Of a stretch of 64,000 bases of DNA, positions 38,601 through 57,377 are shown piece by piece (position 1 is the stretch's first letter; the number at the start of each line of letters is the position of its first letter). The stretch spans positions 28,396,001 to 28,460,000 of the forward strand of contig NC_092354.1 of assembly GCF_963676685.1 (NCBI RefSeq), in the 5' to 3' direction. The notes under the pieces are model-generated. The model ran no database searches, had not been told where the DNA came from, and was given only the letters and a program-made list of their open reading frames with translations. Source of the stretch: Mytilus edulis (taxonomy: Eukaryota). Both the position numbers and the translations under genes were made by a program.

Positions 38601-38929
38601 TTATTTGTGTGTGTAAAAGCTACATCGTTTGACATGACTGATATAATTTGCGTTAAAAAGTCACTGTATAGCATAATTTATATTTGTCTGCTATTTTTTT
38701 GCAAGATTGTTGTTCTTTTTGTGTAACTGCAAAATGCAAACTGCATTATTTTAGCATAATCTGTTTTTATAGGATGCTAGAATGATCTATTTTAAAACTC
38801 TGGAAATAGTTGAGGCGATTAAACCTTCATAAATTACTCAATCTATATTTTTGTAACTTTTTGGAATTTTTGGTCCTCAATGCTCTTCAACTTTGTATAT
38901 GTTTTGGCTTTTTCACTATTTTGATCTGA

Positions 38930-38973
38930 GCGTCACTGATGAGTCTTATGTAGACGAAACGCGCGTCTGGCGT
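38930..38973 (+). ncRNA. Type I hammerhead ribozyme (array copy 1)
   Basis: GCGTCA-CTGATGA-GTCT(TATGT)AGAC-GAAA-CGCGC-GTC-TGGCGT; predicted cleavage after 38967. Confidence 0.88.
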
Positions 38974-39286
38974 ATGAAATTATAATCCTGGTACTTTTGA
39001 TAACTATTTACACCACTGGGTCGATGCCACTGCTGGTGGACGTTTCGTCCCCGATGGTATCACCAGTCCAGTAGTCAGCACTTCGGTGTTGACATGAATA
39101 TCAATTATATGGTCAACTTTGATAAATTTTATGTTTACAAAACTTTGAACTTTTCGAAAAACTAAGTATTTTCTTACCCCAGGAGTAGATTACCTTAGCC
39201 GTATTTGGCACAACTTTTTGGAATTTTTGGTACTCAATGCTCTTCAACTTTGTATATGTTTTGGCTTTTTCACTATTTTGATCTGA

Positions 39287-39330
39287 GCGTCACTGATGAG
39301 TCTTATGTAGACGAAACGCGCGTCTGGCGT
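39287..39330 (+). ncRNA. Type I hammerhead ribozyme (array copy 2)
   Basis: Identical motif; predicted cleavage after 39324. Confidence 0.88.
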
Positions 39331-39642
39331 ATGAAATTATAATCCTGGTACTTTTGATAACTATTTACACCACTGGGTCGATGCCACTGCTGGTGGACGT
39401 TTCGTCCCCGAGGGTATCACCAGCCCAGTAGTCAGCACTTCGGTGTTGACATGAATATCAATTATATGGTCATTTTTATAAATTTTATGTTTACAAAACT
39501 TTGAACTTTTCGAAAAACTAAGTATTTTCTTACCCCAGGAGTAGATTACCTTAGCCGTATTTGGCACAACTTTTTGGAATTTTTGGTCCTCAATGCTCTT
39601 CAACTTTGTATATGTTTTGGCTTTTTCACTATTTTGATCTGA

Positions 39643-39686
39643 GCGTCACTGATGAGTCTTATGTAGACGAAACGCGCGTCTGGCGT
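39643..39686 (+). ncRNA. Type I hammerhead ribozyme (array copy 3)
   Basis: Identical motif; predicted cleavage after 39680. Confidence 0.88.
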
Positions 39687-39998
39687 ATGAAATTATAATC
39701 CTGGTACTTTTGATAACTATTTACACCACTGGGTCGATGCCACTGCTGGTGGACGTTTCGTCCCCGAGGGTATCACCAGCCCAGTAGTCAGCACTTCCGT
39801 GTTGACATGAATATCAATTATATGGTCATTTTTATAAATTTTATGTTTACAAAACTTTGAACTTTTCGAAAAACTAAGGATTTTCTAACCCCAGGAGTAG
39901 ATTACCTTAGCCGTATTTGGCACAACTTTTTGGAATTTTGGGTCCTCAATGCTCTTCAACTTTGTATATGTTTTGGCTTTTTCACTATTTTGATCTGA

Positions 39999-40042
39999 GC
40001 GTCACTGATGAGTCTTATGTAGACGAAACGCGCGTCTGGCGT
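39999..40042 (+). ncRNA. Type I hammerhead ribozyme (array copy 4)
   Basis: Identical motif; predicted cleavage after 40036. Confidence 0.88.
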
Positions 40043-40322
40043 ATGAAATTATAATCCTGGTACTTTTGATAACTATTTGTTAGACTTTTATGCCATTTCC
40101 CTAACATATATATTACATAGCATTAACCAATCTTTATTTGAAATGCATCAGTGAATAGTATGCCAACATCAGTCTTTTTTCTCATACTTCTATTTGTCAG
40201 GTCTCTTTTTTTGCATACCGACATAGAGTATTTTGAAATGTCATTTTATCGATTAATTTCCATATGTCTGCATTCTTCTGGTGTATGCTGAAATGTTACT
40301 CTATCTAATTAATGATATATCT

Positions 40323-41803: not shown

Positions 41804-42553
41804 ATTTTCTTGTAAACATATTTATTATGTACAGGTTCACATAAATACACTTTCATTACAATATATTACATTGATAATATAAAGACATGTGCATTCTCTA
41901 TCACTAACTATCTTCAATCCTCTCGAATCTCAACATTCATTAACTTTTGGTATTGTGGAGGCCTTCACTACTTTCATAACTTTCTCACGTATAAAAAAGA
42001 AATATCTAAATCCAGGAAAGGACAGTTATTACCGAAAAAACTTAATGTATTTACAGTAAGTTCCTTGGGATAAGCAGTATATTGAGAAATTCTTGATTAT
42101 TTAACGAAAAAAAATCATCATTTGATATAAGTTTACCTTTTATAAAATATAAAATATAAAACAAATTAACTATCAATCTTCTAATTCTCCAACGTGTACA
42201 CGAAAACAGCTTCTATCGTCAAACATTTATAAACAATTGCTGGACGGAAGTAGGTTAAAAGGCAGTTATTCCTATTTCTCCATTCAATAAGACCTACGTT
42301 GAATGCTGTTGAGGAAGTTTATTCTCGTGGTTTATGCACAGTCGGTGGTATGTAGTTCATAACCCTGTCCCGTGATGGATCATCATCTTCAGGTGTTTCG
42401 AAAGTTTGAAAGTCATTGGGTGCGCTCGGCTGACAGGTTCTGGACGTCCTGAACGTCTGGAATTAACCGGAAGTCCAGAAAAACAAAATGGAACTGCGTT
42501 CAGAACGAGTTCCGTGCGTCCCCAAAAAAAAGGTGGTGCAGATAGAATTCAAA

Positions 42554-45500
42554 ATGGCGACCAAAGGAGTTGAAGGGTAAATTTACAACAGTATTTAGCT
42601 TCCAGGGACATCAATAATGAAAAATATTACTCATTTTGAAATCGAATCATCACCTTGTATCACCTACATCATATTGACCTATTTATAAGAGAAAATTTGC
42701 GTTGATTGTGTTAAAAACTTCATTTCTGTCTGACAGCCACTGATCAGCGCCGATCGGACAGCCTTTCCCGTCCTGAAGATGTAAATAATGACGACACTGA
42801 AATTTTAATTTATACTATAGATTGTGTACAACAAAACCCTGTGTACATGTACCACACATTGTTGGATCAAGGACTTCCGAAAAGGGGGAGGGGCATTGAC
42901 TGGCTAAGAAAGGACAGTTCTGGTCATGTTTCAGTGATTTTCTATTTCAATATAAATTTCCTCTCAAAAGGTGGGGCCGGGCCACCCCCTGGATCTGCCT
43001 ATGCCACAACCCCTTTGTCCTTGGGTTACATGCATTGCAGCACTTATTTACACAGGAAGAAATGCAACAAGTGTCTGCCCTTTTTTGCTGGTCAGTGGAC
43101 CAACTCTTCAACCTTAAAAAAGGGGGGTGGGTCATACAAAATAATATATCGTAGCTGATTTTTTCCCCCCAAGAATACTACAGGTTTAAATTTTGTAATG
43201 CAGTCAGACAGTGTTTTATATACGGCCAAATTTTTTTCGGTCGTATATTGGTATAGGTCTGCCGTCGTCTGTCAACATTGGTTTCCGCAGGTTATTTCTT
43301 GGTTTGCCTTGACCGATCCTTTTGATATTTTAACACAATGTTACTTATGACAAAATGCAACCTAAGTTCGAAGATGGGGTCCGTGGCCCCTCCCGTTCCA
43401 GAAATAGGGGCCAAAATTCAAAAATTACTTTTCCATGCATTTTCTATGGTTTCTTATGCCCAATCAACTTGGTAATTTAAACTAATATTAATTATGACTG
43501 AAAAAAAAATCAATCCAAAATTCTTTCAATCCATTAAGGAAGTACTCCAACATGGATAAAGACAAATGAGGCATTCTGAAATGAATGCTCGCAATTACTG
43601 AGAGCTACAATGTATCTCAGGAGGCAAAATAGAATGACCAAAGGCAATTTCTACTAAATTTAGAAGTAACTCTGTCACCACACTTTTTTAGCTAGCCGAG
43701 TTTGGAGCTGTAACTTCATACACTTAATTAGTACATGTAATTAATACATGATGTTGTATAATGCCAAAAAAGAAACTTACTATAATTTAGTTTTTTAGTG
43801 TATTTTGTCATAGACACCAAAGCAATTTTTGTAATTAATGTTTCTTTTACATAGGAAGAAACTAGTATACTGCACGCTCGATGGAGTCAAATACTCTGTT
43901 TATGTAGATCCTATGACGAACCACAATTTGAATTCAACAGGTAAGAAACATTAAAAAGATCCAATTTAAATTTCAGATCAGTGGCATGGTGAGGACCAAT
44001 TTAAAGTGGCCCCTTCCCATTGCAGAAAAAGGGGAGATTACAATTTTGTTATTTTCTGTTGACAGTATACATTTGGATTCTCAAGCATATTGCATACACA
44101 CAACTGCTTATGCTGCTTTCAATTTTCAAAAAATGTTTCTATGTTTGCTAATAGAGGGCATTATCTGATTGAACAGTACTAACTGTTTAGTTTTATGTGT
44201 GTACTGGTATCGGTTGGTATAAAGGAATTTATTTTTAGGAATTGTATGTTGTTGTTGAGTACTTTATTGTTGAAATTTGCATAGTCTGGCACGTTTTTTG
44301 TTTTGCAATAAATAGAAAAAAGAAGGGATATGGGGTAAATGCCAAAGAGACAACCACCAACTCCCCGTCAGTAAACGTGTTAAGTTAAACGACTAGAGAT
44401 CAATGTGCAAGCTTCAGAGAATGGTGAGAGCACTCGGTTGGCACACATCCTCTAGAAGGCCTCTAACAAAAAAGTGTTTACAAGTGGCTAATACTGTCCA
44501 ACATCAGAATTACCTTACAAAAAGGGTAAAAATGAGACAGATACGATTACTAACCAACATTTTCCTGACTTGGGACGAGCGCATAAAAGCTTACAGACAT
44601 GTATTTATAATGTCAATTTTCCTAGTCATAATTTTTTAATACATGTACATCATGTACATGTATGCAAAAGAACGGATATGGCAAAATGTCACAAATACAG
44701 TAAAAAAACACCAAAAAGAGAGTGAGCCGAAACTTGCATTCAGATGTCACTGCGTACATGGCATAATGAGTATTCAAATTTCAGGTCACATCACCATGAC
44801 TATGATGTCAGATCATCATATAGATTATTTAAATTTGAATGACACACCCGTGATCAACATATTTTTGATTTTGGACAGCATATATCAGATTTTGGACAGG
44901 CACGTAAAACATGCATTGTTTCTTGTTTTACAGTGTACATGTACTACATATGTATATGCAACTACATTCCTTCAAACATACTGTTATATATCTAAACACA
45001 TTTTGTACTTGTACATTATTTAAACTAACATTTAATTTTTAAATGGAAAATGTATTTAAATACCTATACATTATATACATGTACTTTATTGTGCTTTAGA
45101 TCCTTTGCTGAAAGCTCAGTCGCAAAAGATAATAATTGATGCTGTGAGGGCTAAAACCAATACAGACGACGACGACACGACAACTGAAAACCAGCAGGAA
45201 GGTAAAAAATGTACATTTCCATAGTGGCAATGTATGGATTTTGTACAGTATTTAAATCCGTTTTAGTTCACTTCAGCCAGTGTGGGCGATGTTCATTGTA
45301 AAATGTTGTAAGTCTGACAGTCTGACAGTTAACTTTCCACATTCTCATCATCTTTTTCTCATGAACTACTTACAGAATTTACAATACTTTGGAAAATTGC
45401 ATTTAGTTTTTTTTTCAAGTACAAATATAAAGTTAACTTGAAACAAACCATGCAAATATATAGTACCTAATAGATTTTGTCCCTTTGGTTCAGTTAAAAA

Positions 45501-48044
45501 TTCCAATATGGGCTCCAGTGGACCAAAAGTAGCTCTTGGGATGATGTAAAAAGGTCCAATTCAGTCTATAATGCCGGATGTGGGATTCAGGCTCCTAGTT
45601 GCTTCTATTTTACATCTTTTGAGGAATATCAACTAATTATGATTTTCTAGGTCACAAGTGCAAGGTCAATAAGGGCATTGCAACTTTTGTGTATCATTGT
45701 ATGCCAAGGGGATGCTCCTCTTTATACGGCCCTTTGTTTACTCATGCACATGTATATTGATTTGTTTTCTTGTTAAATGTATAATATTATTTGTCTTACT
45801 TTTTAGAAAACAGTAATAGAGCAACTCTCACTTTTTGCGATGTGTGTAGTCAGGGAGTTGAGAGAGGTGTCAGACATGTTTGCCCAGATGTTGAACAAAG
45901 TCCAGATGGTAAGACATAATGAAATAACATTGTTTCATGAAAATTTCAAATGCTCAGATCTCACAGCCTGAACAATACATGAAATGTAATTTACAAGAAG
46001 TACATGTATATGATGGAAAATGAAGGGATACAGGGTATATGCAGCTTGCATCAAGATTGTAATATGATGAAAAAAGACATGCAGGGAGCTCCAACTTTTT
46101 GTCCTACGATTTTTAGCTCACCTCACGAAGTGAGGGGGGCTTATGTGATACCCTCGGCGTCGGCATCGGCGTCGGCGTCCGGTTAACATTTTTGGTTAAA
46201 GTCCATTCCTGCTTACTGACAACCCCCACCTCAACTATATTGGTATGTATGATGCACCTAGAGATGCTAAGCACTATGCATGCTTCGGGTGCTGGCTGTG
46301 ACCTATATTTTACGCTTGAACGACTCGGTTAAGATTTTTGGTTAAAGTCCATTCCCGCTTACTGACAACCCCCGTCTCAACTATAGTGGTATGTATGATG
46401 CACCTAGAGATGCTATGCACAATGCATGCTTCGGATGCTGGCCGTGACCTATATTTTACGAATGAACGATTCAGTTAAGATTTTTGGTTTAAGTCCCCCA
46501 CATCAATTATATTTGTATGTATGATGCACCTAGGGATGCTAAGCACAATGCATGCTTCGGATGCTGGATGTGACCTAGATTTTACGGTTGAATGATTACA
46601 TGTTATAGAGTCAAAATAGTTAACGAGGTGAGCTTTGTAATCGTTGATTACCTATGTTTTAAAATCTGTGCGTCTTTCGTATCTTGAAAAGAAAAAGTTC
46701 AAGATCACTTCTTAAAAACATGGAATTTCAGTTTATGACCTGGGATGTTGTGGGATTGGTGAGCCCCGTTCGAAACCGTCGGTTGGTAGGATTGTCAAAT
46801 TCAAAACATTTGTAATTTTCTAACACTGTGGGTCTTTTTTCAAAACGTTTTTCTCAAAGATTTTTTTTTGAAGACCTTCCATCATGTTTCTTTGATCAAG
46901 TGGATTGTTATTTGTATAACTGAAGTCCGCCTGTGTGTGTGTGTGTCCCTCCATCCAAACAACCAACTGTTAACGCTCTCATGCTAACATTTCTGAATGG
47001 AATTTGATCCAGTTTTCACAAAAGGCTTTTGTTTTGAATTCGAAAATGAGTGTCGTTTGACAATTTTTGTTGGGAGTTAATGCCCTTTGAATTTTAGATT
47101 ATGTGAACAATTCCCTGGTTAGCTTTCTCACACTTATATTTCTTAATGAATTTTGTCAAAATTTTCACAAAATGTTTTTTTTATTATGAAGCCAATGATG
47201 TACCTCAGTCAAGTTTGAAAATCAGTGCTGTATGACAATTTAAGACAATCAAATAAACCTGATAGTTCTTCCTTAAATTAGATTTAAAGATTTTGGAATC
47301 TGTTGATGCCATATTTATTAACCATCTCATATCTAGCATTTTTGGGGTTTATAAATATAAAATCCTTTTCAGAGTGTACAGTATTCTTTTGTGGTGCAAT
47401 GTCATTAACTTTTAGATCAATATCATGTTTCCATTGCAGATGAATCCAGCAGTAATAAAGAGGATTCAACAGGTACGAATATAATTTGGACAAAAAGTAA
47501 TACGTTACTCCTAATTGAGGAGTATAGGGCAAACAAGAATAAAATGGAAAAGGGCATTTTAAGAAAGAAGGTTGTTTGGGAGAAGATTGCTAAAATGCTC
47601 TGCTCAAAAGGATTTTCTGTTAATGGTGATCAAGTAAATGGAAAGTGGAAAACATTAATGAGGGGGTACAAGAGTGTGAAGGACAATAACAAAAAATCTG
47701 GTGCAGGAAAAAAATCATACGAGTTTGAAGAAGTATTGGATGAACTATTTGAAAATGATCCGATCATTAAACCTGTACTTACCTTAAGCAGCACCGATAA
47801 TAATAAAAAATCTGCCACTGCTACTGATAAACCAGATGATGAAGAAATAGCAACACCAAAACCAGCAAAAAAGCCAAGAAAGACCACCTCTGCAGACATC
47901 GCAGATACCATTAAACAATACTTGCAGGAGTCAAAACAGCATCAGGAAGACACAATAGAAAGACAGGAAAGAATGCATAAGGATCGGATTAACGCCTATA
48001 AAGGAGTTGAAGATGCCCTAAGGAGTTTCCTTGCAAAGAAATAG
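42554..48044 (+). CDS. Harbinger Myb/SANT-like (trihelix) DNA-binding partner protein, 5 exons, ~305 aa
   Basis: Exons 42554-42576, 43855-43940, 45100-45201, 45807-45908 and 47440-48044, all GT/AG, phase-compatible (2,1,1,1) and stop-free. The last exon encodes WTKSNTLLLIEEY...VWEKIAKML...G...QVNGKWKTLMRGYK and a C-terminal coiled coil. Confidence 0.85.
46111..46660 (+). mobile_element. HINE-type element nested in intron 4 of the Harbinger partner gene
   Basis: SubTIR AGCTCACCT (46115-46123) and inverted AGGTGAGCT (46626-46634). CGGCGT microsatellite, 146-bp units at 46189, 46335 and 46481, 3' hairpin GTAATC-GTT-GATTAC. Confidence 0.85.
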
Positions 48045-48603
48045 TAATACATGTATATAAAATTTGAACATGTTCAATTCACTGATTGTCATTGTGTTAC
48101 AGAGTTCATAAAAAATGGGAAAATATTAAAGTATTGAATAATTTCAAATCAACCAATTAAAACAAACATTACAACCGGTCTTTAGAAACTTATGCTTATT
48201 GAATGGCAATTAATTTTTTTTGGGTCATGTTTGCTTAATTCAGAATTCTTAGATAAGAAAAAGGCAGGATCAGAGTTTAATAGTACATGTAACACCGTGA
48301 CTATAAACGGACAGTGCTATTACAGTTGGTCATGTTTTTATTGAAAATTTCCAACCTTTGTACATTATATTTCATATAAATTTTTAGGTGATCGCAAACA
48401 AAGAAATAGAGCTTTATGGACTGTCATACTATATGGTATGCTTTCTTGAAATCTGCAAATAATCAGGTCAAATGCTATGGTGACACAAAACACACACACA
48501 CACAAAGACAGACCAATTCATTTTCAATTGCTTACAATAGTTCGATATTTATGATTTTGGACTGCTTAATGCATTCATTCAAATTTAACATGTATATTTT
48601 CAG

Positions 48604-48752
48604 AATGCAAGATTTGTATGGACAGTGAATCGGATTGCCTAGTTTCACCATGCAACCATTTGGCAATGTGTATGGATTGTGCGAAAATGTTAGATAACTG
48701 TCCAATCTGCCGAAAAGATATTTGCAAAAGACTTAAAATCTTCAGATGTTAA
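48604..48752 (+). CDS. Terminal exon encoding an IAP/MDM2-type C3HC4 RING finger (putative E3 ligase domain)
   Basis: After the TATATTTTCAG acceptor (phase 1): CKICMDSESDCLVSPCNHLAMCMDCAKMLDNCPICRKDICKRLKIFRC*. Spacing C-x2-C-x11-C-x-H-x3-C-x2-C-x6-C-x2-C; no internal stop. Not in the ORF track because it is a short spliced exon. Confidence 0.85.
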
Positions 48753-49167
48753 ACCTTTGTAAATGTTCAAGTGAAACAAGTTTAAATGCATTTAATTTTA
48801 TAACATTTTGATGTTCATATTATTGAGTATAATACTATATAAGTGTCACCTTGTCCGTCCCTGTGTCTGAAAGTTGTTGTTTCTGAATGTTTTTTTTAAC
48901 CTGTGTCACCGAAGGCGAAAGAAGGGCAACTCTGTCTGGCCAAAGACTGATATAGCCTTACCTTGTGTAATCTGTAACTCCAAAAGCATTAATTCGACAT
49001 TCTTAAAAATATGCATAGTTATTGGATAAATATTGAAGATGTACACTTCCTATATTAGGCAGATTCTTAAAATTATTTGTCAAATTTTCATGTATTGAAT
49101 GCAGCCATTTTCTGGAAATATTGTTTTAATTGGTACCTACTGTGTGTAATCTAAATCTGGAACTTTA

Positions 49168-50030
49168 TTCCAAAATCATGATACTTTGCATAGTCATGAG
49201 ATAAATATTGAAGATGTGTACTCTCTTTTTTTGCGTTCTTTCCAAATTAGATGCACATCTTCTTACTAGTTTGGTACTGCGTGACACAGGTTAAGTTTGG
49301 TCTTGTTTTTTTATAGTCCAGTTTCTTATTACATTTTTATTTTTTAAGATTTTAAGGTATAAAATCTTAACTTGTTATGGATATTTTCTTTTACACTTGT
49401 TATACATTTTTATTTTTTAAGATTTTAAGGTATAAAATCTTAATCTAAATTCCAAAATCATGATACTTTGCATAGTCATGAGATAAATATTGAAGATGTG
49501 TACTCTCTTTTTTTGCGTTCTTTCCAAATTAAAAAACAGATGCCAATTTTACTGCGTCTGAATCGCTTTTCTGGATTAACCTTCATCAGGAACGCTCAAG
49601 TTCAAAAAGTAGGAAAGCAAAAAAATCAAATCAAATGGGAGCATTAACACTGAATAGGGCATAAACAGAACAGCCAAAATCAAATTATCCAATTGTTGAA
49701 GTTTAGTCAATATTTTGAAGGTATATTTAGCAGAAACTAAAACAGGTTTTTATTATCTTAATAAACTTTGGTATTTTTGAATGTATTGTCACAAAAGATG
49801 CACATCTTCTTACTAGTTTGGTACTGCGTGACACAGGTTAAGTTTGGTCTTGTTTTTTTATAGTACAGTTTCTTATAACATTTTTATTTTTTAAGATTTT
49901 AAGGTATAAAATCTTAATTTGTTATGGATATTTTCTTTTACACTTGTTATACATTTTTATTTTTTAAGATTTTAAGGTATAAAATCTTAATTTGTTATGG
50001 ATATTTTCTTTTACACTTGTTACATTTTTT
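49168..50030 (+). repeat. Local tandem duplication (~280 bp) with ~73-bp sub-repeats; the second copy carries a ~265-bp insertion
   Basis: TTCCAAAATCATGATACTTTGC...CCAAATT|AGATGCACATC appears at 49168 (uninterrupted) and 49450 (interrupted by 49531-49795). Sub-repeat hairpin TTAAGATTTTA-AGGTA-TAAAATCTTAA. Confidence 0.85.
49554..49595 (-). ncRNA. Degenerate type I hammerhead of a second family
   Basis: Reverse complement reads GCGTTC-CTGATGA-AGGTTAATCCA-GAAA-AGCGA-TTC-AGACGC; stems imperfect. Confidence 0.55.
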
Positions 50031-51453
50031 TTAATTTTTTGAATAAAAATATTGATTTTAAAACAAGTTTTTGTTTCTGTAGCCATATGTATTTTACTTA
50101 CGATAGAAATTTTATGCAATTGCAACAGTTTAGTAGTTCCATTAAAAGAGTCGACAGCTAAAAGAGCAAGGTCACTGTGACTGTTTTTAGAGAGAAAAAA
50201 AGGTTGCTGTGTGATTTTTTATTGCAGACAGATGGAAAATATGGCGTACACATGCCCATCAATTTTTGAGCCAGCAAGTCAAAAGTCAAGGTTACTGTCT
50301 ATGGGGAAACATCTAAAGTGTGTTTCACTTGTTTTGGACAAAGTCGGGAAGAACTATTGGAGTACCTACGGTGTCCATCCACACCTTGGTAGAGGTTAAC
50401 AACTGAGTTAATACCTCGGGTAGGTCAGCATCCAGGCAAAAGTAGGTCACTGTGACATTTTATGCTTTATCAATGATTGGTTAAGTTTTCTGTACGAGTG
50501 TATTTATCAGTAACTATAAGGTGTAGGGCCATGTAACTTGTACACAGATGTATCTGGGATATCCAGACAAAAGTAGGTCACTGTGACCTACTTTTTATGT
50601 TCACTAACTTTTGGTTAAGATTTATGTCTTGAGTCCATGCAACTTTTAGTTGTAGGATTATGTAAACTGGTACACAGATACGTCTGGAGTAGTAGGTAAG
50701 CACCCATGCAAACTACATTCTATGCTTCATCGACTGTTAATTTGGCATCTTTGAAATAGGTGAGGGCAGATCCAGGAATACACCCTAGCCTGAATCTGCA
50801 CCTGATGTTTTATAGTTCAATGTTCCTTTATCTGCCCTATTAGGTTACAGTTTTGAATCACTGTCGTAAACATTTATGGAAGTGGGAGGTTTACCAATTG
50901 CAGCATGCATTGTTTCATGAAAAAGCCTGTTCCAAGTCGGGATATGACAATTTTGTTTGTTGGTTGTTATGAATAGTTCTGTGATTTTTCCAATTAGTTT
51001 TGTAATTCGCCATCTGAAAAATTAAAATACTGTGGGTATAAATTTTCAAACTCAGTTGTTTGTGTTACATTCAGTGACATTTGATTTGTATGTACTTTTT
51101 TTTTCTGGCATCCTTGTCAATGAATGTCTGTGTTCACCTTTTTGTTAGTGTTGAAATATGTAGCATTTGCTCAGGTGCTTTAACTTTTGGGATAAATATA
51201 TCCAGGAACCAAGATCTCGATTTTGTCAGAAAATGTAAACCCAATTCATTGTTGCAGGCTGTATGGTAACCTCTATTTCCAACAAACCAGTTTGCCTGGT
51301 CATTGTTCTTATGAGATATTTAAACTGTGTCTTATTTTATCAATATGGCCTGAAAATCTGCAGAAATATTTAATGAATGGGCAACAATAAATCAATATCA
51401 AATTTAAAGTAAGCTTTTATATAAACACAGTAATAGTCACTTTCATCTGAGCA

Positions 51454-53231
51454 CTAGAGTAGATGTCGTGCAATATTGTCACGTTTCAAAAAACCCTCTG
51501 CCTCTTCATCATTTATTTGAACTATATGTCTATTATTGACAACATCATCATCATCTTGTTGAACTAAGAAGTCGTCAATATTATCATTTGTGAGTATACA
51601 AATATTATGTAAAACACAACAAATCATTATGATCTCAACTGAAGTGTCCAATTTTATAGTCTCCAAGTATTTTAAACGCCTGAATCTGCCCTTGAGTAGT
51701 GCAAATGCTCTTTCTATTACTACACGATTTGAAGAATGATATTGATTGTACTTTTTTTGTTGATCAGTAAGATGTCCATTGTCTCTAAATGGTGTGAGCA
51801 ACCATCTGCGAGTTGGGTAAGCTGCATCTCCTAAAATATGATTTGCCATATTGCACATTCGCAAGCCATTTGTCCACAAGTCTGATTGTTTTAAAACTCT
51901 GGAATCATGAACGCTTCCAGGATATCCAGCGTAAATGTGGGAGAAAAACATATTATGTCTACATACAGCTTGAACTTGGATCGAATGAAACCCTTTACGA
52001 TTAACATACGATTGTGGATGTGAAGATGGTGCTTTAATCCTTATATGGGTTCCATCTACGGCACCAACTATGCCAGGAAACCCATTCCTTTGTTGGAAAG
52101 CATTAACTTCATCCTGCATTTCATGTTGAGTTGGCCAAGAAATAATTTTTTGCTTCAGATTGTTCAGTATTGCAGCAGTTACTCTCTCCCTGCACATTAT
52201 GACTGTTGATTCTGAGACTCCAAATCGATCTGCAATCTTTCTAATAGTATCTAGACTCCCAACATACCATAACGTAATTAATACTTGTTTTTCAACAGTT
52301 ACTACATCACTTCCACCTGTCTGTGTTGGCTGCAATTCAGGACAGTCCCTTAAATAAGTACAAATTCTATCAAATGTTGCACGAGACATCCTGAACATCC
52401 TTCTAAACGACTCTTCGTCATACTGTGGAATAATCTCCTCCACATAGCCATATATCTTAGGACGCAGTTCCGGTTCCCTGCAAAATACAATAAAACATTA
52501 AGTAAGAACCAACCATTTATTCTATTAAACCCAAATAAAAGGTGGGGGGTCTAGTTTTTTCCTAAAAAAATAATTTGATCACTCTGAATTTTCAGAAAAA
52601 AATATTATTTGGTCAGGAAGGTGATGAAGAAAATCTTTTAAATACCATATAAATAATGAAGAAAATCTTTTAAATACCATATAAATAATTTTGACCAAAA
52701 ATATTTTGGTAGACAACGTTAAACAAAACAACAGGAAATTTTTGACTGTCATGTTCATTTTGTATCTGCCAAAAATATTCCCAACTCGGTCATGTCAGTG
52801 GAAAAACCATTGTCCCACCCAGTTAAATATATGTCTAAGCAAAAAATTGTGGAATCCAGGTTTTTGTTAAATCATGTCTTGTACTTTTCCTTAAAAAGTT
52901 TATCGATAGATATCCAGATAAGATAGATAAATATGCTGTTTCATTTTTTAAACATCCAAGATGGGTTTGGTTGAATTCTGTGCAGTATTCATGTACTGAT
53001 TTAATCAGATCACTCTGACTTCACAAATTGATATGGTTGATTCATTTGTATCAGTCATACAACTTATTTTCTACATAAAAACAATATATTGTGCAAAATA
53101 TACCACACACACACGTACATTAAATTGGTCAGCAATGGCAGAATAGGAATAATATCCATAGGATCTTCATATTGGTCGTCTTCATCGTCAATGACGGTCA
53201 ATGCCGCAATAATTGCAACCCCAACCTCCAT
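51454..53231 (-). CDS. PIF/Harbinger DDE transposase (HARBI1-like, DDE_Tnp_4), 2 exons, ~378 aa
   Basis: Exon 1 is 53231-53119 (MEVGVAII...LLTNL, donor GTACGT). Exon 2 is 52477-51454 (acceptor TTTTGCAG, phase 2, in frame). Motifs FRMSRATF, HTH IADRFGVSESTV, GAVDGTHI, NRKGFHS, GYPGSVHDSRV, LGDAAY, RVVIERAFALLKGRFRRL, CCVLHN; catalytic residues intact. Confidence 0.95.
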
Positions 53232-54460
53232 ATTGAATTTGATACATCCGGTTCCGTTCCGTTCGGGTGGCGTATGGAATTGGAACTGACGGAACCTGTT
53301 CGGAACTTGCCAGCCGAGCGCAACCATTGACTCTGTATTTGGAGTAATAATTTTTCAATTCCTTAATATGACTTAGAAATGATATTGTTATTATTCGTTC
53401 TTTCCTGTGTGGATGTTTGAAAAGTGATAACGATTCTAATTTTTTTACAAAACATCACCAAGATTTATTATGGTATGGTCTATAATCTATCCGAAATCCG
53501 AGTCGTCATTTGGCATACTAGTAATATACATTTGAAAATGTCGTTTCTGTCCTTTTGGGTTTTGTCTATTATCAGAGTTGTTTACCAAAGGTGTAATGTT
53601 ATTTCTCTTAAACATGAAACCTTTTCAAGGATACCTTTCAATAAGGACAGGGACATAAGCAATAAAACAATCAGTCCAATCCTTAACAGAAGAACTTTGT
53701 TTTGTATTACCAGCATACCGCCTGTAATGCCAATGGTGTTTTTATTTGTTTGACTGTTGGAATTGTTGCGATGCATAAGGGACAAATCAATATATTCAAA
53801 ATTCCAAATCTTACCCTTAAGCTTTTGACTTATAAATATATCAACCTCTTTAAACCAGGCAACATTTTAGGTTCATTAAAAACTTCAATAACCTCACCTA
53901 CGGCAGCTAATTGAGGTTCATTCTCTTGCAATTCTACATCTGGTTGCAAGGCAACAAAATGAGTTTCATCAACCCTCCGTCTTCTTACTACAGGGACATC
54001 TTCATCAACCTCAACTTGAGGACGCCTTCTCTCATTCCTAACTGGTGCCAGATATCAACTAAGAAACGGCTTCCAGGCTTGGAAGCATGGATTTAAAAAT
54101 GCCATCAGCTCAGAGGAGGCGTTAAAAAGATCTTGTCAATATAATAGTGAGTATTGTTTTATATTTGACAAATTAAATGTATGTTTGGTTTCTCCTATTT
54201 CTGTTTTTTAGGCAAGTGCAAAGAAAATGCAAGCAGCGTGGTCTTTAAAATCTAGGACGAAAATGTATGAAATCCCCTATGTCGCACACCTGGGTTTGTG
54301 TTCATCTTCAACAAAGGACTCTCTTCACACTGAAATCTCCGATAGAATTCTATGAAGATTTTTTTTTAAGTACCTTTTCATCTTTTTGACGTTTGAATAC
54401 ATTATTAATATTTGAAAAACTCATAAATTGGTAATAATCTACCCTTTACTAATCATTTAA

Positions 54461-55590: not shown

Positions 55591-56273
55591 AATGAGACGA
55601 CACATTGAACCAAAAAAAATATGAGCAAAGCTGGGAAAAAATCATTAAAGGCATGAATTGACATCTCAAAACTTGAGGACTTTTGAGGGATTGTAAGAAA
55701 AATTTACTTATACAAGTAAATTTTTGAGAAAACTTAGGGGAGATTATTCAAACATTATTTATTTACTTATATGTGTATATTTTTTGTTTACTTCTTCAAG
55801 TAAATAAAAATAACTTGTGCAAGTAGTACACCTGACTGATATACATGTAGATGATATACCTTTGTTCAGTGCATATCATGAAGAAACCTTTGTGATGTGA
55901 ATATATTGTTCCAGGACTTAACCATCCCAGTTAATGTTTTAAATCCTTGAGTTTAATAAATTTCACATCTTTTGTGTTAGCCTGAATACTTTTAACTTAT
56001 TCATTTGTTATTACAGCTTGCATTAAATAATGCTTTGCAGCTCAGACATAGCTTTTTTTAATTTAATTAAGTTACTTTCCCAATTTCATTTTAATAAGTC
56101 AATATTCAGATTACTCTTAAACTTTAATAAGTCAATATTCAGATTACTCTTAAACTTGCATTCAAATTAATGGTCAACTTGAAAATTGCTAATAAAAGGT
56201 ATCGTGGTTAACATTCAATTTAAGGTGTATTGTTTAGAAATTTATTACAAGATCGTATCCAAAACTGAATATA

Positions 56274-56626
56274 TAGTTATCAAAGGTACCAGGATTATAA
56301 TTTAGTACGCCAGACGCGCGTTTCGTCTACATAAGACTCATCAGTGACGCTCATATCAAAATATTTATAAAGCCAAACAAGTACAAAGTTGAAGAGCATT
56401 GAGGATCCAAAATTCCAAAAAGTTGTGCCAAATACGGCTAAGGTAATCTATGCCTGGAATAAGAAAATCCTTAGTTTTTCAAAAATTTCAAAGTTTGGTA
56501 AACAGGAAATTTATAAAAATGACCACATTATTGATATTCATGTCAACACCGAAGTGTTGACTACTGGGCTGGTGATACCCTCGGGGACGAAACGTCCACC
56601 AGCAGTGGCATCGACCCAGTGGTGTA
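56274..56626 (-). repeat. Retrozyme-family monomer copy
   Basis: Reverse complement of one ~356-bp unit. Confidence 0.85.
56307..56350 (-). ncRNA. Type I hammerhead ribozyme
   Basis: Reverse complement reads GCGTCA-CTGATGA-GTCT(TATGT)AGAC-GAAA-CGCGC-GTC-TGGCGT. Confidence 0.85.
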
Positions 56627-57377
56627 AAAAGTGACCTTCTCCTTTTCTTATCGGATCCTATCGCTTAAAAGATTTTGCATCGCCCATTATACAATCAGAA
56701 ATACTTATCTAAAGACTACTGTATTCTTACACTTAAGTTTAACAATAATCGCTGCTTAACCCTAATCTTATCCTTAGTTTTATTTCAAACCTATCTAACA
56801 TTCAAAACTGTTTCACGGACAACTGTTGTCTTGCATTGTATTTTTACCCACGTCGATTTTAATATTTTTTAACAAGACAGCAGTTCAACAACAGTATATA
56901 AACATCTTCATCCATTTGATAAAACGATGTACAGAGAAACTTTTGCATGGGTACTTTTTCTATTCCATAAATATGTAGTACTGGAATCTTCTTTTAATAT
57001 TTAATGCTATGTTGTTACTTTCAAATCATTGCAATATTAAGGTACCTGTATTTTACAGTACTTGATTTTTTTACTAGAAATTTTAAGTCTATATGTTTTT
57101 GGTTACACCGTCACATTTTCTGCATTCTGAAAGTTTGTCTATTTCAAATTTCTTTAAGTTATGATTTTCAAATATGGAATATTGTTGGTATTATTTCTGT
57201 ACCAAAACTTTAAATACAAATCAAGTACTATAAAATACAGGTACCTAAACTTACAATATGTTTAAAGTGAAGAAATAGTACTAGATATTAAAAGTTTATT
57301 TCCAGTACTACAGATTTTAAGTACAGAAAAAGTACAAATTCAAAAGTAGAAACCTTAACAATAGACAATGGGAAGAT

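What the first reader, a model, noticed from the sequence alone, without database searches (positions are those of the whole stretch)
47440..48752. Harbinger partner gene appears to have two alternative last exons: Myb/SANT DNA-binding or RING E3 ligase
Seen: inside the TIR-bounded element, ~560 bp after the Myb stop, there is an intact C3HC4 RING exon with a clean phase-1 acceptor and its own stop. Two upstream phase-1 donors fit it: exon 4 (G|GTAAG, 45908) and an internal donor at the start of the Myb exon (ACAG|GTACGA, 47472), just before the Myb domain. Predicted products are ~153 aa or ~164 aa (shared N-terminus + RING) versus ~305 aa (shared N-terminus + Myb). I see no convincing phase-1 donor near the end of the Myb exon, so a Myb-RING fusion is not favoured. 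Established: canonical Harbingers encode a DDE transposase plus a Myb/SANT protein, and this RING spacing with a terminal aromatic tail (KIFRC*) is typical of IAP/MDM2-type dimerising E3 ligases. Inference: the transposon may encode its own ubiquitin ligase by alternative splicing, either to turn over its transposase/Myb complex or to degrade host silencing factors. I am not aware of this arrangement being described.
Basis: partly seen in the sequence, partly recalled or inferred. Interest (0 to 1): 0.88.

Follow-up and report, generated by a model that had tools for sequence, protein, structure and literature searches.

The report
Mussel Harbinger transposon encodes RING isoform
A jumping gene (Harbinger DNA transposon) in the blue mussel makes two proteins from its helper gene, the usual DNA-binding one and, by alternative splicing, an IAP-like RING ubiquitin-ligase one, and the RING exon has been kept by selection in this transposon lineage.

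Summary
The window is Mytilus edulis chromosome C11. A 10,908-bp PIF/Harbinger element (42418-53325) carries a DDE_Tnp_4 transposase gene, a five-exon Myb/SANT partner gene, and a 149-nt zf-C3HC4_3 RING exon (48604-48752) 556 nt after the Myb stop.

Evidence that the RING exon belongs to the element:
- Three copies of the whole element, 99.8-99.9% identical with unrelated flanks, all carry it.
- A fourth, old and broken copy (transposase 73% aa identity) aligns only at the ends and exons. It keeps the RING exon with the same acceptor, length, stop and tail.
- Between the two lineages the RING exon has pN/pS 0.245 with saturated synonymous sites. That matches the transposase (0.21) and the Myb exon (0.26).

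Evidence for the splice:
- The internal donor at 47472 (CAG|GTAC) is conserved and is the only good phase-1 donor in the Myb exon.
- RefSeq already lists the predicted isoform at all three loci (186/137 aa, named 'BIR7-B-like', 'RNF34-like', 'rififylin-like'). It equals exons 1-4 + 47440-47472 + the RING exon.

I saw no support for the 45908^48604 junction or a Myb-RING fusion. No RNA reads could be examined, and E3 activity and targets are untested. The scan has not noted this on other DNA. New variant of a known kind.

The parts
42418..53325 (.). Complete autonomous PIF/Harbinger element, 10,908 bp
   Evidence: Block shared at 99.88% and 99.8-99.9% with C11:8.30 Mb and C11:23.08 Mb, with unrelated flanks. 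The ends coincide with the inverted repeat found.
42418..42445 (+). Left terminal inverted repeat (GGGTGCGCTCGGCTG...). The window copy is flanked by ATT at 42415-42417.
   Evidence: The terminal ~170 bp are conserved at 74% in divergent copy D.
53298..53325 (-). Right terminal inverted repeat. It is flanked by ATT at 53326-53328 (3-bp target-site duplication in this copy).
   Evidence: 53213-53315 is conserved at 73% in copy D.
42488..42576 (+). Partner gene exon 1. The RefSeq ATG is at 42488. A second ATG at 42554 is the one conserved in copy D. Donor AGG|GTAAAT, phase 2.
43855..43940 (+). Partner gene exon 2 (shared N-terminus)
   Evidence: The peptide is found at residue 31 of both P0001 and P0013. 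Conserved in D with its splice sites. pN/pS 0.225.
45100..45201 (+). Partner gene exon 3 (shared N-terminus, acidic low-complexity tail)
45807..45908 (+). Partner gene exon 4 (shared N-terminus). It holds a conserved C-x2-C-x9-H-x-C motif. Donor ATG|GTAAGA, phase 1.
47440..48047 (+). Composite terminal exon 5. Its first 33 nt (47440-47472) are shared by both isoforms. The rest encodes the Myb_DNA-bind_4 domain and a C-terminal helical tail, with stop TAG at 48045-48047.
   Evidence: pN/pS 0.256 against D.
47470..47478 (+). Internal alternative 5' splice site CAG|GTACGA (last exon base 47472, phase 1)
   Evidence: It is the junction used in RefSeq isoforms P0013, P0011 and P0021. It is the best phase-1 GT in the exon. 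CAG|GTAC is conserved in D although the neighbouring codons differ and 12 nt are inserted just after it.
48125..48161 (+). Two ATTAAA hexamers (48125, 48156), candidate poly(A) signals for the Myb isoform. They lie inside the intron that the RING isoform removes.
   Evidence: This is sequence only; their use is not shown.
48604..48752 (+). RING exon: phase-1 acceptor, 48 codons of IAP-type C3HC4 RING with the tail RLKIFRC, stop TAA
   Evidence: Pfam zf-C3HC4_3 at E 8e-13. It is identical in three copies. Acceptor, length, stop and tail are conserved in D, at 67% aa identity. pN/pS 0.245 with pS 0.91. The best solved relatives are the cIAP2, cIAP1, XIAP and BIRC7 RINGs.
51454..52477 (-). Transposase exon 2 (DDE_Tnp_4), convergent with the partner gene
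   Evidence: pN/pS 0.21 against D.
53119..53231 (-). Transposase exon 1 (ATG 53231, 94 bp inside the right end)
   Evidence: The peptide matches residues 1-37 of RefSeq 'putative nuclease HARBI1' P0172.

Best explanation
This is an autonomous PIF/Harbinger DNA transposon of Mytilus. Its Myb/SANT partner gene ends in a composite terminal exon.

If the transcript runs through exon 5 and is polyadenylated shortly after the TAG, it encodes the canonical Myb-like helper: a shared N-terminus, the trihelix DNA-binding domain and a C-terminal helix.

If the internal 5' splice site at 47472 is used instead, the Myb domain, its basic KKPRK stretch and the C-terminal helix are all removed as intron. The shared ~138-aa (116 aa from the conserved ATG) N-terminal module is then joined to a downstream exon encoding a complete IAP-type RING with the dimer/E2~ubiquitin-contacting tail.

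Shown here:
- The exon lies inside the element in every copy.
- It was present in the common ancestor of two lineages that have since diverged to synonymous saturation.
- It has been kept under purifying selection as strong as that on the transposase.
- Its acceptor and the internal donor are conserved.
- The spliced product is in RefSeq at all three loci.

Inferred: the RING isoform is an active, probably dimeric E3 ligase. It uses the shared N-terminal module to reach the same partner(s) as the Myb isoform (the Myb protein itself, the transposase, or a host factor). Because it lacks the DNA-binding and basic regions, it acts off the transposon ends.

My preferred mechanism, by analogy only, is self-regulation of the transposition complex by ubiquitylation. 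The splice/polyadenylation choice would set the ratio of helper to ligase.
For: - Element boundaries and three 99.8-99.9% copies that all carry the exon.
- Divergent copy D keeps only the TIRs and exons as alignable islands, the RING exon among them.
- Acceptor ttttcag|AATGCAAGAT, 48 codons, the stop and the RLKIFRC tail are conserved, and all eight zinc ligands are kept in D.
- pN/pS: RING 0.245 (pS 0.91, Fisher p 1.8e-11), N-terminal exons 0.27, Myb exon 0.26, transposase 0.21.
- The internal donor is conserved in D and is the only strong phase-1 donor in the exon.
- RefSeq isoforms P0013, P0011 and P0021 equal exons 1-4 + 47440-47472 + the RING exon.
- The Myb domain starts 5 residues after the junction.
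- The RING aligns end to end with the cIAP2, cIAP1, XIAP and BIRC7 RINGs, including the tail phenylalanine at the same distance from CPICR.
- No close host RING exists.
Against: - The RefSeq isoforms are computed models whose transcript support I could not inspect.
- No protein with the RING junction appears among the protein clusters listed outside RefSeq, so the isoform may be rare.
- No AATAAA or ATTAAA follows the RING stop within 750 nt.
- The selection estimate rests on one pairwise comparison of 48 codons, and copy D is itself a dead copy.
- The family is tiny: 3 intact copies, 1 dead copy and 1 fragment, all on one chromosome.
- Other Harbinger families in the same genome show no RING within 1.5 kb of their Myb exon.
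- E3 activity, dimerisation, partners and any effect on transposition are untested.
- The complex prediction of the shared N-terminus with the transposase gave no answer.
Confidence: 0.72

Rival explanations
1. The RING exon is a passenger. A host RING last exon was captured once by an ancestor of this small family, and the cryptic donor at 47472 occasionally splices to it, giving a by-product with no role for the element.
For: Only this clade of Harbingers has the exon. The family has very few copies. The isoform is seen only as RefSeq models. Bivalve genomes are full of similar C-terminal RING exons (57 hits).
Against: A passenger should decay like the introns, which are unalignable between the two lineages. 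Instead the exon has pN/pS 0.245 with nearly every synonymous site changed, equal to the essential genes. It also keeps its acceptor, length, stop, zinc ligands and tail, as well as the internal donor.
Confidence: 0.12
2. The RING isoform is a weapon against the host. The shared N-terminal module binds a host silencing or restriction factor, and the RING marks it for degradation, as viral E3 ligases do.
For: The exon is selectively maintained. The isoform lacks the DNA-binding domain, so its job is not end recognition. Other transposons carry ubiquitin-system enzymes that are thought to protect transposition proteins, for example the Helitron VTD deubiquitinases (PMC9741609).
Against: No host partner is known. 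The N-terminal module matches no known domain. Nothing here separates this reading from self-regulation.
Confidence: 0.2
3. The RING exon is joined to exon 4 (45908^48604), giving a 153-aa protein, or it belongs to an independent third gene of the element with its own promoter.
For: The exon 4 donor is phase 1 and strong (score 8.9), so that junction is frame-compatible.
Against: The 14-member protein cluster and the search with the RING isoform show only the 47472 junction. No 175/153-aa product was found. No ATG-initiated ORF covers the whole RING: the only ATG ORF starts inside it, at 48618.
Confidence: 0.1

Closest known systems
Canonical PIF/Harbinger transposons (e.g. Harbinger3_DR; plant PIF/Pong)
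   Same: It has a DDE_Tnp_4 transposase plus a separate Myb/SANT/trihelix helper gene, TIRs and a 3-bp target duplication in the window copy. The helper is known to import the transposase and to bind the ends (summary of Sinzelle 2008 in PMC9392472).
   Different: The helper gene here has an extra downstream exon and an internal splice donor. Together they replace the Myb domain with a RING E3 domain. I found no paper describing this, and other Harbinger families in the same genome lack it.
IAP-type C-terminal RING E3 ligases (cIAP1/2, XIAP, BIRC7; also the RNF34/rififylin, MUL1 and CGRRF1 class, Pfam zf-C3HC4_3)
   Same: It has the same ligand spacing and the same 12-residue tail after CPICR, with phenylalanine at the position aligned to the cIAP2 tail Phe. 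In BIRC7 and cIAP that tail supports RING dimerisation and E2~Ub contact; this point is from my own knowledge of those structures, not tested here.
   Different: It has no BIR, FYVE or other host-type N-terminal domain. The N-terminus is the transposon helper's own module. Identity is 60% or less to any non-element RING. RefSeq's names ('BIR7-B-like', 'RNF34-like', 'rififylin-like') reflect only the RING.
Drosophila P element and immunoglobulin mu heavy chain (alternative splicing / composite terminal exon)
   Same: One transposon gene yields a full-function protein and a truncated protein that shares its N-terminus (P element). The choice between an internal 5' splice site and an upstream poly(A) site decides the C-terminus (Ig mu). 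Both comparisons come from my own knowledge.
   Different: Here the alternative product gains a new enzymatic domain rather than simply losing one.
Other transposon-borne ubiquitin-system or RING modules: Helitron VTD deubiquitinases, the RAG1 N-terminal RING
   Same: These are mobile-element proteins that act on or through ubiquitin (PMC9741609; PMC1131882 listed).
   Different: Those are domains fused within the main transposition protein, and they are DUBs or a RING in a Transib/RAG lineage. Here it is an E3 RING delivered as a splice isoform of the Harbinger helper.

Membership tests
PIF/Harbinger superfamily of DNA transposons | DDE_Tnp_4 (HARBI1-like) transposase | tested here: met
   PF13359 at E 1.2e-39. 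The 378-aa RefSeq model is 'putative nuclease HARBI1'.
PIF/Harbinger superfamily of DNA transposons | Second gene encoding a Myb/SANT/trihelix protein | tested here: met
   PF13837 Myb_DNA-bind_4 at E 3.6e-13.
PIF/Harbinger superfamily of DNA transposons | Terminal inverted repeats at the limits of the mobile unit | tested here: met
   The inverted repeat coincides with the ends of the block shared by three loci.
PIF/Harbinger superfamily of DNA transposons | 3-bp target-site duplication | tested here: inconclusive
   The window copy has ATT/ATT. The other two copies show CTA/TAA and CAT/ACA, which are not perfect repeats.
PIF/Harbinger superfamily of DNA transposons | Evidence of mobility | tested here: met
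   Three copies at 99.8-99.9% identity with unrelated flanks and all ORFs intact.
IAP-type RING (Pfam zf-C3HC4_3) E3 ligase domain | C3HC4 ligand set with the family's spacing | tested here: met
   E 8e-13, above the gathering score. The ligands are conserved in copy D.
IAP-type RING (Pfam zf-C3HC4_3) E3 ligase domain | C-terminal tail with a conserved aromatic residue a fixed distance after the last zinc ligand | tested here: met
   The tail Phe aligns with the cIAP2 3EB5 tail Phe. The RLKIFRC tail is identical in D.
IAP-type RING (Pfam zf-C3HC4_3) E3 ligase domain | Ubiquitin-ligase activity with an E2 | not testable with these tools
   Needs an in vitro ubiquitylation assay.
Inhibitor-of-apoptosis (BIR-containing) protein family | At least one BIR domain | tested here: not met
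   Pfam finds only the RING in the 186-aa isoform. It is therefore not an IAP despite the RefSeq name.
Alternative last exon through a composite terminal exon | Internal 5' splice site, a downstream acceptor in a compatible phase, and a poly(A) signal inside the optional intron | tested here: met
   Donor score 8.0, phase 1. The acceptor is phase 1. ATTAAA lies at 48125 and 48156.
Alternative last exon through a composite terminal exon | Both mRNAs observed | tested here: inconclusive
   Both are present as RefSeq isoforms at three loci.

The most novel reading that the evidence does not exclude
A DNA transposon lineage has acquired its own E3 ubiquitin ligase and delivers it as a splice isoform of its DNA-binding helper. 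The ratio of splicing to polyadenylation would then switch the element between a transposition-competent state (Myb helper) and a ubiquitylating state (RING isoform) that degrades either the element's own transposition proteins or a host restriction factor.
Probability: 0.45. Interest if true: 0.8.

Novelty: new variant of a known kind. Interest (0 to 1): 0.66.

Why it matters
Harbinger elements are the textbook two-gene DNA transposons. Their helper has been domesticated many times (NAIF1, the MSANTD genes, plant HDP2/ALP partners). A lineage whose helper gene also yields a selectively maintained RING E3 isoform would be a natural case of a cut-and-paste transposon recruiting the ubiquitin system through RNA processing.

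It is directly testable. There are three intact, nearly identical copies with all ORFs open, a small 164-186-aa protein, and a clear assay: auto-ubiquitylation, plus transposition with and without the isoform.

It also corrects public annotation. Three RefSeq genes named after IAP, RNF34 and rififylin are in fact isoforms of a transposon helper gene. That matters for counts of the expanded IAP/RING repertoire in bivalves.

Tried and rejected
No spliced reads were seen.
The contigs of the 83-86% identical relatives P0002 and P0174 could therefore not be checked for a RING exon.
- Two scans of metagenome contigs, with the Myb exon and with P0002, found no confirmed relative.
The more distant Harbinger families of this genome were therefore checked for a RING only within about 1.5 kb of their Myb exons, using loci already held. 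None had one.
- Complex prediction of the transposase with the shared N-terminal module returned 'no answer'. That is neither for nor against binding.
- The ESM Atlas look-up of the N-terminal module gave only sub-threshold leads. Pfam finds no domain there.
- The joined spliced model was never built or searched by me. The exons were searched and checked one by one by reference, and the spliced proteins used (P0013, P0021, P0011) are database records returned by the tools.
- Rejected: a one-off capture in this copy only, since the exon is present in all copies and in the divergent lineage.
- Rejected: near-identity to a host IAP exon (57% or less in the genome, 60% or less in the library).
- Rejected: a Myb-RING fusion, since there is no usable phase-1 donor near the exon end and no such protein on record.
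- Locus E (C11:35.95 Mb) is not a host source gene. It is a ~600-bp fragment of the D-type element with a zinc-ligand Cys changed to Phe.
Full report
**Where we are.** The window is Mytilus edulis chromosome C11:28,396,001-28,460,000 (species from the records). The finding sits inside a long element that also holds a DDE_Tnp_4 ORF on the minus strand at 51454-52443.

**The observation**
- Reading 45000-49500 shows the exon as described. After a pyrimidine-rich acceptor (tatattttcag|AA, exon start 48604) there are 48 codons and a TAA at 48750-48752.
- The peptide matches Pfam zf-C3HC4_3 at E 8e-13, above the gathering score.
- The preceding large exon (47440-48047) matches Myb_DNA-bind_4 at E 3.6e-13.
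- With a crude 5' splice-site matrix, the 47472 site scores 8.0, within the range of the four constitutive donors (7.0-11.1). Every other phase-1 GT in the exon scores 5.0 or less, and the one nearest the end scores -6.1.

**The element**
- An inverted repeat at 42411-42445 / 53298-53332 marks the ends.
- BLAST of the window against 30-kb stretches around the two other perfect RING hits on the same chromosome shows one block, 42418-53325 (10,908 bp). It is shared at 99.88% with C11:8.30 Mb and at 99.8-99.9% with C11:23.08 Mb, and similarity stops exactly at the repeat ends.
- All three copies have intact Myb, RING and transposase frames.
- The window copy is flanked by ATT on both sides. The other two copies lack a perfect 3-bp duplication, which I leave unexplained.
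- The two genes converge. The partner gene starts 71 bp (RefSeq ATG 42488) or 137 bp (ATG 42554) inside the left end. The transposase starts 94 bp inside the right end (ATG 53231; exon 1 53231-53119, exon 2 52477-51454).

**Is the RING exon a real part of the family?**
- A fourth copy, D, lies at C11:6.737-6.743 Mb in the same gene order. Its transposase is 73% identical in protein but has stops and a frameshift, and its Myb exon has one frameshift.
- At DNA level, D aligns with the window element only in islands: both ends, exon 2, the Myb exon, the RING exon and the transposase, at 70-77% identity (exon 1 lies within the left-end island). Everything between is unalignable. A more sensitive local alignment also finds exons 3 and 4, in order.
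- In D the RING exon keeps the acceptor (ttttcag|AATGCAAGAT), the 48-codon length, the TAA, all eight zinc ligands and the tail RLKIFRC.
- A fifth locus, E (C11:35.95 Mb), is a ~600-bp fragment of the D type, 97% identical to D. It has three amino-acid changes, including loss of a zinc-ligand Cys.

| Region (window vs D) | pN/pS | Further figures |
|---|---|---|
| RING exon | 0.245 | 23.7 of 26.0 synonymous sites changed (pS 0.91); 26.3 of 118 non-synonymous sites changed (pN 0.22); Fisher p 1.8e-11 |
| N-terminal exons 2-4 | 0.27 | |
| Myb exon | 0.256 | |
| Transposase | 0.21 | |

These are Nei-Gojobori counts. The RING exon has therefore been constrained as protein-coding sequence to the same degree as the genes the element cannot do without, over a divergence that erased the introns.

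**How it is spliced**
- All constitutive splice sites are conserved in D. So is the internal donor: CAG|GTAC is retained although the codons before it differ and 12 nt are inserted right after it.
- Public records independently contain the product. The 90% cluster of the Myb protein (P0001, 327 aa, XP_071139839/40) also holds two 186-aa proteins: XP_071139842.1, 'baculoviral IAP repeat-containing protein 7-B-like isoform X3', and XP_071139330.1, 'E3 ubiquitin-protein ligase RNF34-like isoform X3'.
- The third locus has a 137-aa 'rififylin-like isoform X2' (P0021).
- Checked exon by exon, without joining anything myself, the peptides of exons 2, 3 and 4, of 47442-47471 and of the RING exon sit at residues 31, 60, 94, 128 and 139 of P0013. 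One split codon lies between each pair, and the last is G|AA = Glu.
- The Myb domain begins 5 residues after it.
- No record shows the 45908^48604 product.
- Two ATTAAA hexamers lie 78 and 109 nt after the Myb stop, inside the optional intron. The layout is thus that of a composite terminal exon, where splicing competes with polyadenylation.
- The upstream ATG that RefSeq uses is TTG in D, and an in-frame TAA follows it there.

**What kind of RING**
- The closest solved chains are the RINGs of cIAP2 (3EB5, E 2e-10), cIAP1, XIAP and BIRC7. The alignment runs to the tail phenylalanine.
- The isoform has no BIR or other host domain, so it is not an IAP.
- The nearest non-element RINGs are 57% identical in this genome and at most 60% among 1.84 billion representatives. 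Those I inspected had unrelated N-termini. A recent capture from an extant host gene is therefore excluded, and the donor cannot be named.

**How wide**
- Other Harbinger families in this genome (transposase about 50% identical, Myb about 30%) show no RING motif within about 1.5 kb of their Myb exon. None of the 57 RING hits lies beside them.
- The exon therefore characterises one clade, the window type plus the D type.
- Relatives at 83-86% identity exist in other assemblies (P0002, P0174), but their DNA could not be fetched.

**Mechanism**
- Shown: the anatomy, the conservation and the annotated isoform.
- Inferred: the RING isoform is an E3 ligase that keeps the helper's N-terminal module. 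That module contains a conserved C-x2-C-x9-H-x-C motif in exon 4. The isoform loses DNA binding, the basic stretch and the C-terminal helix.
- In the known system, the helper binds the transposase N-terminus, imports the transposase and recruits it to the ends (PMC9392472, summarising Sinzelle 2008).
- I think the most likely role is regulation of the element's own transposition complex by ubiquitylation. Action on a host factor is the main alternative. Nothing here separates the two.
- A complex prediction of the N-terminal module with the transposase gave no verdict.

**Novelty**
- Full-text searches found no paper on a Harbinger with a RING or E3 function.
- The nearest precedents are Helitron-encoded deubiquitinases (PMC9741609) and the RING of RAG1.
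- The isoform itself is already in RefSeq, under names that hide its transposon origin. I file it as a new variant of a known kind.

**Limits**
- No reads were examined.
- Selection was measured on one lineage pair.
- The family is small and confined to one chromosome.
- Function is untested.

Noticed in passing
G000 C11: 6.74, 8.30, 23.08, 28.44 (window) and 35.95 Mb: All five copies or fragments of this Harbinger clade lie on chromosome C11. A large share of the other Harbinger transposase hits are on C11 too. This may be local hopping or a bias of the search.
   Followed up: no
window 42415-42417 / 53326-53328; L031/L035 and L032/L036 flanks: Only the window copy has a perfect 3-bp duplication (ATT). 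The other two near-identical copies show CTA/TAA and CAT/ACA. The right flanks of the window copy and of copy B share ATTGAC, and the window flanks form a near-palindrome (AGTCATT...ATTGACT). This suggests a preferred palindromic target.
   Followed up: partly
window 38855-40078 and 56270-56632; also about 1.7 kb upstream of the copy at C11:8.30 Mb: The same ~356-bp tandem repeat (noted by another reader as a hammerhead array) lies near two of the three element copies, and in inverted orientation on both sides of the window copy.
   Followed up: no
window 42488-42554: The upstream ATG that RefSeq uses for the partner gene is not conserved in the divergent copy, which has TTG followed by an in-frame TAA there. 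The second ATG at 42554 and its context GAATTCAAAATGGCG are conserved.
   Followed up: partly
window 45830-45885 (exon 4): A C-x2-C-x9-H-x-C motif (TFCDVC...GVxHxCPD) in the shared N-terminal module is conserved between the two lineages. It may be a small zinc-binding unit. It has no Pfam match.
   Followed up: no
window 49445-49869: The copy at C11:23.08 Mb lacks about 425 bp that the window copy has here. The region holds internal direct repeats, so this is probably a repeat-number difference.
   Followed up: no
window 46180-46609 (intron 4): Two adjacent ~146-bp-offset direct repeats, 84% alike, lie inside intron 4 of the partner gene and are present in all three copies. They may be a nested short repeat element.
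   Followed up: no
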